Positions 1-6,581 of a stretch of 7,051 nucleotides of DNA are shown piece after piece. Positions within the stretch are counted from its first letter, which is position 1, and every line of letters begins with the position of its first letter. The position numbers and the translations under genes are program-made. The notes under the pieces are model-generated. The model had not been told where the DNA came from and ran no database searches. It was given only the letters and a program-made list of their open reading frames with translations. Origin of the DNA: Octopus sinensis (lineage: Eukaryota); contig NW_021829016.1 of NCBI RefSeq assembly GCF_006345805.1, positions 1 to 7,051 of the forward strand, given 5' to 3'.

Positions 1-600
1 GGTCACCACCACTACGACTACTACTACTACAACCATTACTACTATTCTACCCCACCACCACCACAACCATCTCCCCACCGACACTATAATTACATCACAA
101 CACCACTGCTACCACTACCACCATCACCTGTACGATCATTACTATCACTAACACATATACACACACACACACGCCGCACACAGACGTACGACGCACAACA
201 ACACGCACGCACACACACACGCTACGACACAGACGTACGCACACACACACACGCACACATACTACCATCACGTCACAACCGCAACCACCTCTACCGTCAT
301 TAATTACCTTTTCATAACCACCACCTCGACCCACCATAACTGCTACCGCCACCACCACCAACACTAGTACCACTATCGCTACCACCACCACCAATTACAC
401 ATTCTCAACCACCACCACCACCACTGCCATCAGTAACACCTTTACAAACACCGCCACGATCGCATTCAATTACACCGCCACAACCACCACCACATTCAGC
501 CCCTATACCACCGTCACCACCACCACCGTTTACACGGTCACAAACACCGCCGCCACCGCCGCCGCCGCTACCACTACCATTATTAACACCAATATCAACA
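1..600. repeat. Degenerate (ACC/ACT/GCC)n low-complexity tract with an embedded (CA)n/CACG block at about 153-262
   Basis: Directly visible triplet periodicity and CA runs. Confidence 0.9.
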
Positions 601-689
601 GCCAGCCACTCAGCCAGTCATATTACAAATTTCACAAGAAACAACAACAAAAACCCCCCGAAGAAGCCCCGATGCCTATTTGATGCAGC

Positions 690-1019: not shown

Positions 1020-1020
<1 letters not shown>

Positions 1021-1072
<52 letters not shown>
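1021..1072. repeat. Perfect (AGAT)13 tetranucleotide microsatellite
   Basis: 52 nt uninterrupted. Confidence 0.97.
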
Positions 1073-1185
1073 TGCAGTATTTATTACATATTTATTTCAT
1101 CGCTCATTTACTTTCGGAAGAGATTTACGGAAAAGTCAAATGATAAAAAAAAAACGGCAAATTAGAGAGATTGATTAAACTATGA

Positions 1186-1313
1186 ACACACACACACACA
1201 CACACACACATACACACACACATACACACACACACACCACACAATTGTGTGTGTGTGTATATGTGTCTGTGTCTGTGTGTGTGTGTGTGTATGTGTGTGT
1301 GTGTGTGTGTATG
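1186..1313. repeat. (CA)n followed by (TG)n, forming an imperfect inverted repeat
   Basis: A CA arm and a TG arm are joined by the palindrome CACACAATTGTGTG (1238-1251). Confidence 0.93.
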
Positions 1314-1741
1314 CAGGCAGACATAATTAATGGCTATTACATACGATTAACATATTTAGAAGTACGTACACACGCAGATTCGCAAAATATAAACACACAC
1401 TCTAACACAAACACGCAAACATATGCGTGTGTGTATATAAATATATATATATATGTTTGTGTGTGTAGAACGCACACCTCTTGTATAAATAATTGCACTT
1501 TAACACAATTTTACATATTTCGTAATTGCTTCACTAACTGTTTCCGGCTATCCATTCGGGTACACACGCATACATGCATACAACACACGAAGAAAAAGTA
1601 ACAACGGACCGTAACATCTTTCCTCTCATTCGAACTTGTGTATTATAGACGAGCATTTTTATTATATACACTCACTCAACGAATACCACTGATATTTTAT
1701 CGAACTGTAGTTTTACATATTACATGCGCATACATGTGTGT

Positions 1742-1813
1742 TAGTTGTTATTGTTGTTATTATTATCATTATTACTATTATTATTATTATTTTATTATTA
1801 TTATTATTATTAT

Positions 1814-1851
<38 letters not shown>

Positions 1852-1889
1852 AGTAGTAGTAGTATCATTATTATTGTTATTATTATTGT

Positions 1890-1922
<33 letters not shown>

Positions 1923-1955
1923 TATTATTATTGCTGCTGTTGTTGTTGATGTTAT
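1742..1955. repeat. Compound trinucleotide microsatellite (TTG/TTA/GTA)n
   Basis: Directly visible; source of the poly-I/L/V/Y/N ORFs in the track. Confidence 0.95.
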
Positions 1956-2335
1956 TCAATCGTAAATTATGTTGTTTGTTTTTATTTGTCTGTTTACATT
2001 TATTTATTAACATGCTAATATCAACAGATTCATGTTATTTCTATATACCTCGTATGATATACTAACTACATCAGTGCCATCCTATATACACCACGCTATG
2101 TGATGTCTGCGTGTGTGTGTGTAAAGACAAACATACAGATATATGACTAAGTACACACACAACACACACATATATATATATAATTTATAGTTAACACTTC
2201 CTTGTTTTACCTTTTCTCTGTATTTTGTTTTCCCAAATACAAATACATACATATATGTATATATATATATGCATTCACATACGCACACAAATTTGTACGT
2301 ACCTACGTACGAACGTACGAACGTATGTATGCATG

Positions 2336-2339
<4 letters not shown>

Positions 2340-2393
<54 letters not shown>

Positions 2394-2405
2394 ATATATA
2401 TATAT
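2340..2405. repeat. (TA)n microsatellite with one phase interruption
   Basis: Directly visible. Confidence 0.96.
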
Positions 2406-2528
2406 GAATGAAGGCATGTATGCATCATAGATGAGGTAATGACGTTGATACGGATCAAAGATAGTAATTAGTTCGATCGCAATTACTTTTCCTCTTCCTG
2501 TCTATTATCATCGTCACCCTCATTAAGA

Positions 2529-2579
2529 TTATTATTATTGCTCTTCTTCTTCTTGTTCTTCATATTATTATTATTATTA

Positions 2580-2618
<39 letters not shown>

Positions 2619-2652
2619 CATTATTATTATAATTATCATTATTATTATTATT
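2529..2652. repeat. Compound (TTC)/(TTA)n microsatellite
   Basis: Directly visible. Confidence 0.93.
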
Positions 2653-2895
2653 GTTTTTCTTCTTTCAATTTTGTTTTCATTTGTTGCCGAGTGCCTTCCC
2701 GATACCTAGGGAAAAGAACATTATAATTATTATGATTATTATTTATTCATTTATTTTGCAGGTTACCGACCCAGCCTGTTATCACTCCGTTGTGTATACA
2801 CCTCTTCTTTATTTTTTTCTTCTCTGACGCTGTAATATGTAAAACATACAAACACACGTACACGAAAAAGAAAAACTCACTCTCGGACAGATTGG

Positions 2896-2914
2896 CACAC
2901 ACACACACACACAC
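2896..2914. repeat. (CA)n microsatellite
   Basis: Directly visible. Confidence 0.92.
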
Positions 2915-3033
2915 GTTTGCTAAAAGGAAAAATGTATGTCAAAAGAAAACTTCATCTTAGAGGAAACTTCCTACAAAAATAGCAGTCAAAGTACAAAAAT
3001 ATTGAGCAATAATATGCAAACTGAATAACATTT

Positions 3034-3106
3034 ACACACACACACATACACACACACACACACACACAATACATACACACATATAAACACATACATACAT
3101 ACATAC
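3034..3106. repeat. (CA)n grading into (CATA)n
   Basis: Directly visible. Confidence 0.92.
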
Positions 3107-3483
3107 TGGCAAAAAGACAGACATGACAACTGAGTTGATATCGTCCAAATTTCAATGAAAGAACCCATGTTTATGGGTTCCAAGACCGCGTCTTCCTATT
3201 AATGGTTAAATATTTATAAGATATGAGAAACCGACAGACATTTCCATAGAAAACAAAAAGGAGAAAAGAAGAAAATAAAAAGACAACGATGATTTGCTAC
3301 CACCCAAATATTATTCCTGCTACCTATATACTTTTGCCATTGCAAGGCCAATATTTACCGGATTCCGGAACTGAAGAACATAGCAACACTTAATCTTTAA
3401 CGGTACTGAAAATTCTTACACACGATAAGTCGGTCCAGTAAGTGAAAAAGAATTCTCTTATTTGTTGCGTGCTCTAACACGTG

Positions 3484-3519
<36 letters not shown>

Positions 3520-3536
3520 ATATATATTATATATAT

Positions 3537-3582
<46 letters not shown>
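3484..3582. repeat. About 100 bp (TA)n microsatellite with a few interruptions
   Basis: Directly visible; ends about 515 nt upstream of the Dbx ATG. Confidence 0.96.
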
Positions 3583-3939: not shown

Positions 3940-4098
3940 TCTATCTGCCATAACGACAACGATAACAACGATAACAACATCAAACGATACCTTCAAGGCT
4001 CACAAAACAGCAACAGCAACAGCAACAACACTGACGCAAGTCATTCAATCATCCGATCAACAACGACATCTACAAGAGCCAAGAGACAACCCCTAAAC

Positions 4099-4764
4099 AT
4101 GTTCAACAACGTGTTGGCTCCTTCGCCCATTTACCACCAGAGTGTGTTCCGCGTCTCCCCGATGGCGCTGGCCACGCCGCCGCCTCCGCCGCCACCGCCG
4201 CCGCCCCCTCCTCCGCCGCCGCCGCCCACGGTCACCACGGCTTCGACGTCGTTCCTGGTGGAGAACCTGCTCCGAGATCGAACCCCGCCCCTCATTTCCC
4301 GTTGTGCCGCCGCAATGACAACAAACTCGAACTCTCTCTCCTCCTCCTCCTCCTCCCCCTGTTCTCCCTCCGCCGCAGCAGCGGCAGCAGCAGCGGCAGC
4401 CGCAGCAGCAGCAGCGGCCACCGCCAACACCACCTGCACCACCACCACCACGACTAACAACAACAACAACAACAACCACAACAACTTCAGCAACAACATC
4501 AACACCAGTAACACGTCATTGACTTTAGTGAACACACCCCCTTCGCTACACCACCCCTCCCATACGTCATCACACTTATCGTCCTCGTCGCCATCATCAT
4601 CACTATCATCATCGCTGTCTCTAACATCGCCGTCGTCATCATCCTTATCATCGTCATCATCATCATTATCATCGTCATCACCGTCATCGTCGTCATTATT
4701 GTCCTCAGTCAATCCGTCTTCGAACTGTTCCTCGCTGTCCACTTTGTCTCTACACATTCCGGGT

Positions 4765-4796
<32 letters not shown>

Positions 4797-5515
4797 CGGT
4801 GGCTGCAACAGTAGCAATAGTAATAGTAGTAGTAGCAGCAGTAACAGTAGTAGCAGCAGTAGTAGTAGTAGTAGTAGTAGTAGTAATAGTAGCAACTGTA
4901 ATAATAACAATAGTAGTAATAATAATAATAATAGTAGTAGTAATGGCAGTAGTGGTGGTGTTAGTAATGGTAATATTAATGGTATGGGTGTGATGGGGAT
5001 AGTAGGAGTTTGCGGCGGCGGCGGCGGCGGTGGTGGTGGTGGTGGTAGTGATAGCGTTGGGAGCAGTGGCGACGGGAGTGGTAGTGAGGGGGTCGGGAGT
5101 ATGGGTTGTAACAGCAGCAACGGCGCAGGTAGTTTCGACTGTGAAGGCAATGTGGGCGGAGGTAATCATCACCACAGCCACAACCATCACAGCAACAACA
5201 ATCTCAACAACAACAACAACAACCACAATAATCCCCATAACAACAGCAACAACAACAACAACACGACGTCGCTGGCGGGTGCAGTGAGTGCGGCGGCGGC
5301 GGCGCGATCAGCCGTGGCCGCTGCTGCAGCGGCGGCCGCTTGTGCGGCTGCGCACGCTGCCGCTGCCGCCGCTGCAGAGCCGGTGACAGGCAGGACAACA
5401 CCCTCGTGCCCGACCGGTTCAGTTGGAAGCATGGCTGCAGGAGGTGGTGTCACAACACCTTTCCTTAAATTTGGAATGAACGCAATACTGGCGCCGGACA
5501 CAACACCGAAACAAG
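4099..5515 (+). CDS. Dbx: First coding exon of a Dbx-family homeobox transcription factor (472 codons + 1 nt; homeodomain not in window)
   Basis: ATG at 4099 in AAAC-ATG context is the first Met after an in-frame TAA at 3937-3939. Motifs MFNNVLAP, TSFLVENLLR (aa 50-59) and TPFLKFGMNAIL (aa 453-464) match, in order, the vertebrate DBX1 N-terminal motifs as I recall them (MMFPGLLAP, SSFLVEDLIR, TTFLKFGVNAIL). The frame stays open for 1.4 kb through many triplet repeats and ends at a consensus donor. The related Hlx shares LKFG-type motifs, but the three-motif set fits Dbx better. Confidence 0.88.
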
Positions 5516-5521
5516 GTAAGT
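5513..5521 (+). other. 5' splice donor AAG|GTAAGT, phase 1
   Basis: Perfect consensus donor; the intron starts at 5516, 8 codons plus 1 nt after the FLKFGMNAIL motif. The ORF-track tail (KFSL*) is intronic read-through. Confidence 0.9.
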
Positions 5522-5540
5522 TCTCTTTATAGTATTTCAT

Positions 5541-5584: not shown

Positions 5585-5776
5585 ATCCTTTCTGCAATAG
5601 TTTGAAATTTTCGGGGAAGGGGTCTAGACGATTGCATCCAACCCCTTATCTTATTTTATGGAACCCTAAAGGATAAAAAAGCAAAGTCAACCGCGGCAGA
5701 ATTTGAACTCAGAACACGAAGACGGACGAAAATCATTTCGCCCGGCGTGCTACCGATTCTACCAGCTCACTGCCCT
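5585..5776 (-). mobile_element. tRNA-derived SINE copy 1 (octopus-type), with internal deletion
   Basis: Plus strand reads AAAGTCAACCGCGGCAGAATTTGAACTCAGAAC...CATTTCGCCCGGCGTGCTA...CCAGCTCACTGCCCT. The minus strand carries a B-box-like GTTCAAATTC (5699-5708). Clearly homologous to the three downstream copies. Confidence 0.85.
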
Positions 5777-5804
5777 GATGATGATGTCAATGATGAGGAT
5801 GATG

Positions 5805-6015
5805 ATCCTTTCTACTAAAGGCACAAGGCCTGGAACTGGGAGGTGGGGTACTATTCGATTATATCGACCCCAGTGTTTCACTGGTACTTACTCTATCGAC
5901 CCCAAAAGGATGAAATGGAAAGTTGACCTCGGCGGAATTTGAACTTAGAACGTAAAGACGGACAAAATACCGCAAAGCATTTTACCGGCGTGCTAATGAT
6001 TCTGCCAGCTCGCCG

Positions 6016-6018
<3 letters not shown>
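5805..6018 (-). mobile_element. tRNA-derived SINE copy 2, the most intact copy
   Basis: Minus strand begins AGGCGGCGAGCTGGCAGAATCATTAGCACGCCGG, with an A-box-like TGGCAGAATC and a B-box GTTCAAATTCC (5934-5944). The 5' GGCGG can pair with the downstream CCGCC like a tRNA acceptor stem. Resembles the abundant Octopus tRNA-derived SINEs as I recall them. Confidence 0.9.
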
Positions 6019-6019
<1 letters not shown>

Positions 6020-6060
<41 letters not shown>

Positions 6061-6090
6061 TAATAATAGTAATAATAATAATGATAATAA

Positions 6091-6120
<30 letters not shown>
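6020..6120. repeat. (AAT)n then (AGT)n tract between SINE copies 2 and 3
   Basis: Directly visible. Confidence 0.95.
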
Positions 6121-6121
<1 letters not shown>

Positions 6122-6318
6122 TCCAAATTTTGGTAGAGGGCCAGGAATTGTGTGGGAAAGTGGGGAAGTCGATTACATTGGTTTCAGCTACTTTATTTTA
6201 TCAATCCTGAAAAGATGAAAATGCAAAATTGATTTCACCATCATTTGAACTCAGAACGTATAGAGCCGGAAGAAATGCTGCTACGCATTTATTCCGACAC
6301 CTTCACGATTTTACCACC
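6121..6318 (-). mobile_element. tRNA-derived SINE copy 3 (divergent variant, decayed 5' end)
   Basis: Shares TTTGAACTCAGAACGTA (6244-6260) and GAAAAGATGAAA, plus a G-rich block and GTCGATTACAT. Its 3' end (TTCCAAATTTTGG) and head (GAGCCGGAAGAAATGCTGCTA) differ from the other copies. Confidence 0.78.
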
Positions 6319-6354
6319 ACAACAACAACATTGACAAGAATAATAATAACAATA

Positions 6355-6570
6355 ATCTTTTTTACAATAAGCACGAGGCCTGGAAATTGGTGGGTGGGGG
6401 TAAGTCGGTTACATCATTCCCAGTGCGTAACTGGTACTTATTTAATCAACTCTGAAAAGATGAAAAGCAAAGTCGACCTCAGCTGAGTTTGAACTCAGAA
6501 TGTAAAGACGGACAAAATACTAATAAGCATTTCGCCCGGTATGCTAAAGATTTTGCCCATTCGCCGCTCT
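6355..6570 (-). mobile_element. tRNA-derived SINE copy 4
   Basis: GCACGAGGCCTGGAAATT...CCAGTGCGTAACTGGTACTTA...AAAGTCGACCTCAGCTGAGTTTGAACTCAGAATGTAAAGACGGAC...TTCGCCGC aligns end to end with copy 2 by eye. Confidence 0.88.
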
Positions 6571-6581
6571 TATTAGCAACG

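What the first reader, a model, noticed from the sequence alone, without database searches (positions are those of the whole stretch)
4276..5460. Dbx N-terminus inflated by a ~395-aa homopolymer linker between two conserved motifs
Seen: 395 residues separate SFLVENLLR and FLKFGMNAIL. They consist almost entirely of runs: A16 (4372-4419), poly-T/N, two long poly-S blocks, a pure (AAC)11 poly-N (4765-4797), G11 (5014-5046), an H/N-rich block and a second poly-A block. P17 (4177-4227) precedes the first motif. Knowledge (recalled): in human DBX1 this spacer is roughly 60 aa. Inference: microsatellite slippage has been tolerated in-frame, creating a large prion-like or disordered domain in a neural patterning transcription factor. 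It could be length-polymorphic and could affect condensate behaviour or repressor activity. Keeping the frame open over 1.4 kb of slippage-prone DNA implies selection against frameshifts.
Basis: partly seen in the sequence, partly recalled or inferred. Interest (0 to 1): 0.7.

Follow-up and report, generated by a model that had tools for sequence, protein, structure and literature searches.

The report
Repeat-inflated linker in octopus Dbx
The first coding exon of the Octopus sinensis Dbx homeobox gene has 395 low-complexity residues, built from in-frame trinucleotide repeats, between two conserved co-repressor-type motifs that lie only 35-193 residues apart in 77 other animals; it is an extreme example of a well-known kind of repeat expansion in developmental transcription factors.

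Summary
The window is a whole 7,051-bp unplaced contig of the Octopus sinensis assembly. It carries one stop-free 472-codon exon (4099-5515) that ends at a consensus splice donor.

The exon has all 11 invariant and 11 of the 12 nearly invariant residues of a 47-sequence alignment of Dbx N-termini. Profile searches return named Dbx proteins and no other named family.

The spacer between SFLVENLLR and FLKFGMNAIL is 395 aa. In 77 relatives it is 35-193 aa (median 58). Named non-cephalopod molluscs have 35, 35, 40 and 106, and a mammal-like DBX1 exon has 60.

The spacer is 75% S/N/A/G/T, but only 35% lies in runs of four or more, so "almost entirely runs" overstates it. AlphaFold2 predicts disorder apart from one Ala-rich helix.

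Several signs point to translated sequence. The exon has only period-3 arrays, repeat interruptions concentrate at third codon positions, and there is no credible internal splice site.

Best reading: slippage-driven, largely tolerated expansion of a naturally variable disordered linker.

The prion-like or condensate role is untested and borderline by composition. No cephalopod comparator, transcript or homeodomain exon could be reached. This is a new member of a known kind, of modest interest.

The parts
4099..5515 (+). Coding part of Dbx exon 1: 472 codons plus 1 base, from the start codon to the base before the splice donor
   Evidence: ORF 4099-5532. No stop in frame. The start motif MF.N..APSP.Y...FR is shared with relatives.
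4099..4152 (+). Conserved N-terminal motif MFNNVLAPSPIYHQSVFR
   Evidence: Y12 and R18 are invariant; M1, N4 and P8 are nearly invariant in the 47-sequence alignment.
4177..4227 (+). Pro17 run (mixed CCG/CCT/CCA/CCC codons) in the first variable linker
   Evidence: Relatives P0002-P0004 and L006 carry Ala9-Ala13 runs at the same place.
4249..4275 (+). Motif 1, SFLVENLLR, with an eh1-like pattern (F-x-V-x-x-L-L)
   Evidence: F52 and R59 are invariant; S51 and L53-L58 are nearly invariant. The fit to the eh1 pattern is my inference. That Dbx1/2 carry Eh1 motifs and bind TLE is from PMC3281934.
4276..5460 (+). 395-aa low-complexity spacer. The head DRTPPLISR keeps the nearly invariant R68; the rest is S/N/A/G/T-rich.
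   Evidence: Predicted disordered, with pLDDT mostly below 50.
4765..4797 (+). Pure (AAC)11, encoding Asn11: the longest uninterrupted microsatellite in the exon and the most likely to vary in length
4810..4953 (+). 48-unit AGT/AGC/AAT array (Ser/Asn block), including pure (AGT)9 at 4858-4884
   Evidence: AAT and AGT (TAG) arrays also lie in the intron at 6020-6121, and a TTA array lies upstream at 1748-1932.
5014..5046 (+). Gly11, encoded by (GGC)5(GGT)6
5266..5370 (+). Second Ala-rich block, residues 390-424: the only predicted helix
   Evidence: AlphaFold2 helix at 390-424, with 10-residue block mean pLDDT of 67-90 over residues 391-430.
5461..5490 (+). Motif 2, FLKFGMNAIL, a second eh1-like pattern (F-x-M-x-x-I-L); identical in Lottia, Lymnaea and Candidula
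   Evidence: L456, K457, F458, G459, A462, I463 and L464 are invariant. Motif strings.
5516..5521 (+). Splice donor, AAG|GTAAGT
   Evidence: It scores 8.6 bits on a crude donor matrix; the next best GT in the exon scores 2.7. ORF-called relatives end in ...PKNGK...PKNSK or ...PKNCK, which I read as read-through of a donor at the same place and phase (inference).

Best explanation
This is the first coding exon of the Octopus sinensis Dbx (developing brain homeobox) orthologue.

In all animals sampled, Dbx exon 1 encodes three conserved pieces: an N-terminal MF.N..APSP.Y..FR motif and two short hydrophobic motifs that fit the eh1 (Groucho/TLE-binding) pattern. Between these lie linkers that vary freely in length and sequence.

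In the octopus the second linker has grown to 395 residues. That is about seven times the median and twice the maximum seen elsewhere. It grew by accumulating in-frame trinucleotide microsatellites (GCN, ACC, AAC, TCN, AGY/AAT, GGY) through replication slippage, in a genomic neighbourhood saturated with microsatellites.

The product is a disordered, uncharged, S/N/A/G-rich tether that the protein tolerates because only the flanking motifs need to stay intact. The frame is kept for two reasons: slippage moves in units of three, and frameshifts would lose motif 2 and the downstream homeodomain.

Shown here: identity as a Dbx N-terminus, the outlier length, the repeat make-up, the signs of coding constraint and the predicted disorder. 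Inferred: the slippage mechanism, near-neutral tolerance and TLE binding by the two motifs.
For: - Source. The window is contig VCDQ01008208.1 of GCA_006345805.1, which is O. sinensis.
- Family. All 11 invariant and 11 of the 12 nearly invariant alignment residues are present.
- Length. The spacer is 395 aa against 35-193 aa in 77 relatives. Named gastropods have 35-106 aa.
- Repeats. Pure tracts (AAC)11, (AGT)9 and (AAC)7 are present. All exon arrays have period 3, whereas 7 of 14 flanking arrays have period 2 or 4 (p = 0.03).
- Coding constraint. Period-3 interruptions by codon position 1/2/3 number 11/18/34 in the spacer (p = 0.0013) and 12/18/41 in the whole exon (p = 5e-5). Four non-coding control arrays in the same window show no bias.
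- Splicing. The only strong donor is at 5516.
- Structure. Mean pLDDT is 50.7, and the only secondary structure is the Ala-rich helix.
- Precedent. An unrelated Dbx-like exon, P0072, has a 193-aa spacer with Gly and His runs. The linker is therefore repeat-prone in other lineages too.
- Expression. A dbx1/2 gene, LOC115218560, is expressed in GABAergic neurons of the octopus brain. That study annotated this same assembly.
Against: - No transcript evidence was reachable, so translation of the whole spacer is inferred.
- No other cephalopod Dbx was found, so the age and lineage of the expansion are unknown.
- The contig is a 7-kb unplaced fragment of a PacBio-based assembly. Repeat lengths may be imprecise, it may be a haplotig, and its link to LOC115218560 and to a homeodomain exon is unverified.
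- Neutral tolerance is assumed, not tested.
- The third-position test is ad hoc, and the period test rests on small counts.
Confidence: 0.78

Rival explanations
1. The linker is a selected functional module: an N/S-rich prion-like or condensate-forming domain that tunes Groucho-dependent repression by Dbx in octopus neurons, possibly acting as a length-polymorphic 'tuning knob'.
For: One 80-residue window (from residue 221) holds 30 Asn. By the Q/N-rich criterion I recall (30 or more Q/N per 80 residues) that is exactly borderline. The product is predicted disordered. Amino-acid runs are kept through synonymous codon changes, for example A16 and P17. Interruptions favour third positions. The linker lies between two putative TLE-binding motifs.
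Against: There is no Gln at all. The Asn runs are broken up by long Ser, Gly and Ala blocks. With only 2 aromatic and 11 charged residues there are few 'sticker' residues. A third-position bias needs only that the region be translated, not that its length be adaptive. The same repeat types fill the non-coding flanks, which fits mutational pressure. No predictor, polymorphism data or assay was available.
Confidence: 0.1
2. Much of the low-complexity stretch is not in the mature mRNA. An internal intron, or a different gene model, removes it, and the real protein has a linker of ordinary length.
For: There is no transcript evidence here. Low-complexity DNA stays stop-free easily, and the antisense frame is open for 344 codons. 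Weak GT and AG sites do exist inside the spacer.
Against: The best internal donor scores 2.7 bits against 8.6 for the true one, and no acceptor downstream of the internal donors has a good pyrimidine tract. Motif 1, motif 2 and the donor are all in one frame with no stop. Interruptions concentrate at third codon positions of that frame, and no period-2 or period-4 repeat occurs.
Confidence: 0.1
3. It is an assembly artefact or a non-functional copy. The 7-kb unplaced contig would be a mis-assembled or haplotypic fragment whose repeat lengths are inflated, or a dead duplicate of exon 1.
For: The window is a whole unplaced 7,051-bp contig of a PacBio and Hi-C assembly. About half of the window outside the exon is simple or interspersed repeat.
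Against: An intact 1,417-base frame, a perfect donor and every family-invariant residue are unlikely in a decayed copy or an error-rich contig. Indel errors would break the frame.
Confidence: 0.08

Closest known systems
Dbx (DBX1/DBX2, developing brain homeobox) family
   Same: It shares the N-terminal MF.N..APSP.Y..FR motif, the SFLVENLLR motif and the FLKFG(V/M)NAIL motif. The last is identical to Lottia, Lymnaea and Candidula. The exon ends at the same place after ...PK(N/Q).
   Different: The spacer between the two motifs is 395 aa, against 35-193 aa elsewhere. The first linker carries a Pro17 run. The homeodomain is not on this contig, so it was not seen.
eh1 (Engrailed homology 1) Groucho/TLE-recruiting motifs of homeodomain repressors
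   Same: Both conserved motifs have the F-x-hydrophobic-x-x-hydrophobic-hydrophobic pattern. Dbx1 and Dbx2 are reported to carry Eh1 motifs and bind TLE (PMC3281934).
   Different: Which of the two Dbx motifs binds TLE was not checked here, and no binding data exist for the octopus protein. Two motifs tethered by about 400 disordered residues is unusual spacing.
Homopolymeric amino-acid repeat expansions in developmental transcription factors (for example mammalian Pou3f2, PMC4040985; cyclostome Emx, PMC4464114; duplicated vertebrate TFs, PMC4540963)
   Same: In-frame trinucleotide repeats give Ala, Gly, Ser, Pro, His and Asn runs in disordered regions outside the DNA-binding domain, in a lineage-specific way (titles and abstracts listed).
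   Different: The scale differs: about ten different runs packed into one 395-aa linker, rich in Asn and Ser and with no Gln. No cephalopod case turned up in my searches.
Q/N-rich prion-like domains
   Same: Uncharged, disordered and rich in Asn runs. One 80-residue window holds 30 Asn.
   Different: There is no Gln and almost no Tyr or other aromatics, and Ser, Ala and Gly dominate. No predictor was run and no aggregation data exist.

Membership tests
Dbx homeobox family | N-terminal motif MF(P/H/N)N..APSP.Y...FR at the start codon | tested here: met
   Y12 and R18 are invariant; M1, N4 and P8 are nearly invariant; all are present.
Dbx homeobox family | First eh1-like motif, SFLVENLLR | tested here: met
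   Exact match at 4249-4275. F52 and R59 are invariant; S51 and L53-L58 are nearly invariant.
Dbx homeobox family | Second motif, (F/Y)LKFG(V/M)NAIL, near the end of exon 1 | tested here: met
   5461-5490, identical to the Lottia, Lymnaea and Candidula motif.
Dbx homeobox family | A search with the N-terminal profile returns Dbx proteins and no other named family | tested here: met
   The named hits are DBX or DBX1-like (Saccoglossus, Ptychodera, Glandiceps, Parasteatoda; Lineus by cluster look-up) or homeobox-domain proteins of molluscs, plus one uncharacterized spider protein. An Owenia (annelid) protein with the same motifs came from the second search.
Dbx homeobox family | Conserved intron position just after ...PK(N/Q) | tested here: met
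   The donor AAG|GTAAGT at 5516 follows one base after the Gln codon. Relatives called as ORFs end in read-through ...PKNGK...PKNSK or ...PKNCK. The phase is inferred from those read-throughs.
Dbx homeobox family | Dbx-type homeodomain (...RRAVFSD.QRK.LEK.F..QKYISKPDRKKLA.KLGLKDSQVKIWFQNRRMKWRNSKE) | not testable with these tools
   The contig ends at 7051 inside the intron, and no later exon is in the window. Full-length relatives that share the N-terminus do have it.
eh1 / Groucho-TLE-binding motif | The pattern F-x-(I/V/L/M)-x-x-(I/L)-(L/I) | tested here: met
   FLVENLL and FGMNAIL both fit. The consensus is recalled from the literature.
eh1 / Groucho-TLE-binding motif | Physical binding to the WD40 domain of Groucho/TLE | not testable with these tools
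   Reported for vertebrate Dbx1/2 (PMC3281934). There are no octopus data.
Q/N-rich prion-like domain | At least 30 Q/N in 80 consecutive residues (criterion recalled from memory) | tested here: inconclusive
   The maximum is exactly 30, all Asn, in residues 221-302. The second-best region has 22.
Q/N-rich prion-like domain | A positive score from a trained predictor (such as PLAAC), or experimental aggregation or condensation | not tested
   No such predictor was available.

The most novel reading that the evidence does not exclude
The roughly 400-residue Asn/Ser/Gly/Ala linker is a coleoid- or octopus-specific functional innovation. It would be a length-polymorphic, condensate-forming tether between two Groucho-binding motifs that changes how Dbx represses its targets in GABAergic interneurons. 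That would make it a concrete case of microsatellite 'tuning' of a neural patterning factor in the lineage with the largest invertebrate brain.
Probability: 0.08. Interest if true: 0.6.

Novelty: new member of a known kind. Interest (0 to 1): 0.3.

Why it matters
Dbx is a conserved neural patterning repressor, and an octopus brain atlas reports dbx1/2 in GABAergic neurons. A sevenfold-expanded disordered linker between its two co-repressor-type motifs is a clean natural test of how much spacer such repressors tolerate. It also offers markers, (AAC)11 and (AGT)9, that are likely to vary in length.

There is a practical lesson as well. The low-complexity stretch swamped an ordinary homology search, and the exon sits on an unplaced contig, so gene models for this locus may be incomplete. 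As a phenomenon, though, repeat expansion in transcription-factor linkers is well known.

Tried and rejected
- Searching with the whole 472-aa product failed. 8000 low-complexity candidates were collected and none was significant. A construct of the conserved ends worked.
- Pfam gave only sub-threshold noise on the exon product.
- The 477-aa read-through product is not in the clustered protein collection, so no near-identical octopus alleles or orthologues could be listed.
- The exhaustive profile search and the metagenome scan (locus L006) returned no sequence recognisable as cephalopod.
- The sources of the unnamed comparators (GCA_029979845.1, GCA_013332895.1, GCA_022702875.1, SRR23967707, ERZ samples) could not be tied to organisms. 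A literature search on six of these identifiers found nothing.
- I looked for internal introns with a crude donor matrix and a pyrimidine-tract count, and found nothing credible.
- Rfam and ARAGORN found nothing in the window.
- The 339-aa antisense ORF at 4131-5150 (poly-Leu and poly-Asp) was rejected as the complement of the repeats.

Full report
**What the window is.** An exact look-up of the 477-aa read-through product places it on NCBI record VCDQ01008208.1 of assembly GCA_006345805.1. That contig is 7,051 bases long, so the window is the entire contig. Two papers identify the assembly as Octopus sinensis (Li et al. 2020, PacBio plus Hi-C). The sequence is, however, a short unplaced fragment.

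**Check of the observation.** The longest ORF is 4099-5532 on the + strand.
- SFLVENLLR at 4249-4275 and FLKFGMNAIL at 5461-5490
- a 395-aa spacer at 4276-5460
- Pro17 at 4177-4227 and Ala16 at 4372-4419
- pure (AAC)11 at 4765-4797 and Gly11 at 5014-5046
- two Ser blocks, an H/N block and a second Ala block

The spacer composition is S 107, N 72, A 49, G 42 and T 27, which is 75% of residues. It has 11 charged residues, 2 aromatic residues and no Gln. Only 35% of residues lie in homopolymer runs of four or more (42% in runs of three or more). The stretch is better described as compositionally biased with many runs than as 'almost entirely runs'. Tandem Repeats Finder reports period-3 arrays, or multiples of three, across most of the exon.

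**Identity.** A search with the whole product was swamped by low-complexity words. A construct of the conserved ends found two exon-1-like ORFs. A profile built from them found 63 proteins. An exhaustive profile search found 48.

The named hits are:
- developing brain homeobox 1 of Saccoglossus
- DBX1-like proteins of Ptychodera, Glandiceps and Parasteatoda
- DBX of Lineus ruber and L. longissimus
- homeobox-domain proteins of Lottia, Patella, Lymnaea, Candidula and Owenia
- one uncharacterized spider protein (Caerostris)

The full-length hits among these carry the Dbx homeodomain. The octopus exon has all 11 invariant and 11 of the 12 nearly invariant residues of a 47-sequence alignment. The one exception is V460, which is Met in the octopus, as in other molluscs. 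Its second motif, FLKFGMNAIL, is letter-for-letter that of Lottia, Lymnaea and Candidula.

The exon ends at AAG|GTAAGT. This is the only strong donor in the ORF: 8.6 bits against 2.7 or less for any other GT. ORF-called relatives end in ...PKNGK...PKNSK or ...PKNCK. I read this as read-through of a donor at the same position and phase (inference).

The homeodomain itself cannot be checked, because the contig stops inside the intron.

**How unusual the spacer is.** In the 77 relatives where both motifs could be located, the spacer runs from 35 to 193 aa, with a median of 58 and a 90th percentile of 109.

| Source | Spacer (aa) |
|---|---|
| Lottia | 35 |
| Patella | 35 |
| Lymnaea | 40 |
| Candidula | 106 |
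| Hemichordates | 48-49 |
| Lineus | 56 |
| Owenia | 66 |
| Spiders | 64-67 |
| Mammal-like DBX1 exon (P0082) | 60 |
| Octopus sinensis (this window) | 395 |

The largest other case, P0072 from a Logan assembly of unknown organism, has 193 aa with Gly and His runs. Relatives P0002-P0004 and L006 carry Ala9-13 and Gln10 runs. These linkers are therefore repeat-prone in several lineages, and the octopus is the extreme.

**Is the spacer really coding?** No transcript data were reachable. Four indirect lines of evidence say it is.
1. The start motif, motif 1, motif 2 and the donor all sit in one frame with no stop in 472 codons. The other frames have 4-55 stops.
2. The seven distinct repeat arrays inside the exon all have period 3. 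Of fourteen arrays in the flanks, seven have period 2 or 4 (AC, TG, TA, TAGA) (one-sided Fisher p = 0.03).
3. Isolated interruptions of the period-3 pattern fall at codon positions 1/2/3 in the ratio 11/18/34 in the spacer (p = 0.0013) and 12/18/41 in the exon (p = 5e-5). Four non-coding trinucleotide-rich control regions of the same window show no bias. Accordingly Ala16 and Pro17 are encoded by mixed synonymous codons.
4. No internal donor and acceptor pair looks usable.

That is only partly sound. Trinucleotide slippage preserves the frame automatically, and low-complexity DNA is easily stop-free: the antisense frame is open for 344 codons. Lines 2 and 3 are the better evidence.

**Mechanism.** The pure tracts are (AAC)11, (AGT)9, (AAC)7, (CTC)6, (GCG)6 and (CAA)6. 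They are the signature of recent replication slippage. The interrupted tracts (Ala16, Pro17, TCN-Ser) look older.

The two Ser blocks use different codon families, TCN and AGY. They therefore arose separately. The AGY block grades into Asn by AGT/AAT changes.

AAT and AGT arrays also lie in the intron at 6020-6121, and a TTA array lies upstream at 1748-1932. This suggests that genome-wide mutational pressure, not gene-specific selection, supplies the raw material.

AlphaFold2, run with the 47-sequence alignment, gives a mean pLDDT of 50.7. It predicts no secondary structure except a helix over the second Ala block, residues 390-424.

My best reading is a tolerated, slippage-driven expansion of a disordered tether between two eh1-type motifs. 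Vertebrate Dbx1 and Dbx2 are reported to carry Eh1 motifs and bind TLE (PMC3281934). That both octopus motifs fit the eh1 pattern is my own inference.

**The prion-like or condensate idea.** One 80-residue window reaches 30 Asn, exactly the Q/N-rich threshold as I recall it. Elsewhere the maximum is 22. There is no Gln and almost no aromatic residue. I could not run a trained predictor. The idea is not excluded, but nothing here supports it beyond composition and disorder.

**Known biology and novelty.** An octopus brain cell atlas that used this very assembly lists LOC115218560 as dbx1/2 and reports high expression in GABAergic neurons. Whether that gene model includes this contig is unknown.

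Literature searches for Dbx in cephalopods, and for amino-acid repeats in cephalopod transcription factors, found no description of this linker. Repeat expansion in developmental transcription factors is itself well documented, for example Pou3f2, cyclostome Emx and duplicated vertebrate TFs. I therefore rate this a new member of a known kind, of modest interest.

**Limits.**
- No cephalopod comparator, no transcript, no homeodomain exon and no population data.
- The contig is unplaced and repeat-rich, so exact repeat lengths should be treated as provisional.

Noticed in passing
window 5587-6572 (minus strand): copies at 5587-5790, 5806-6016, 6122-6335 and 6352-6572: The intron after exon 1 holds four degenerate copies (about 72% column identity) of a roughly 215-nt interspersed element with a tRNA-like head (consensus ...GGTAGAATCGTTAGCACGCCGGGCGAAATG...GAGTTCAAATTC...). 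Each adjoins an (AAT/ATT)n array, one followed by (AGT)n. It looks like a tRNA-derived SINE whose tails seed trinucleotide microsatellites. ARAGORN and Rfam report nothing.
   Followed up: partly
window 1-650: A strongly strand-asymmetric A+C-rich, G-poor tract (C 281, A 224, T 103, G 52 in 660 bases) made of CCA/CAC/ACC-type repeats plus an AC dinucleotide array at 151-259. One + frame is open from about 317 to beyond 660, but nothing suggests a gene.
   Followed up: partly
window 1020-3582: Dense non-coding microsatellites upstream of the gene: (TAGA)13 at 1020-1072, AC and TG arrays at 1186-1310, (TTA)n/(AGT)n at 1748-1932, TA arrays at 2336-2405 and 3484-3582, (TAT)30 at 2563-2652 and AC at 3034-3103. 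About half of these have periods that would shift a reading frame; none of that kind occurs in the exon.
   Followed up: yes
window 4131-5150 (minus strand): A 339-aa antisense ORF (poly-Leu, poly-Asp, poly-Gly) overlaps the exon. It is the reverse complement of the coding repeats and is not evidence of a second gene.
   Followed up: partly
P0072 / locus L005 735-1721 (Logan SRR23967707): A Dbx-like exon 1 from an unidentified animal has a 193-aa spacer with Gly and His runs (H8NH6). This is a smaller, independent inflation of the same linker.
   Followed up: partly
loci L001, L002, L004, L006, L007, L008: Many Dbx exon-1 ORFs sit on contigs of 'metagenome' assemblies (ENA, JGI, NCBI). These are animal DNA inside microbial datasets, called as single prokaryote-style genes that read through the splice donor.
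   Followed up: no
window 3940-4098: The 160 bases before the start codon are A/C-rich (A 69, C 49, T 21, G 19 in 158 bases), with (AACAGC)3.7 at 4006-4027 and GATAACAAC repeats. The likely 5' UTR thus shares the repeat character of the exon.
   Followed up: no
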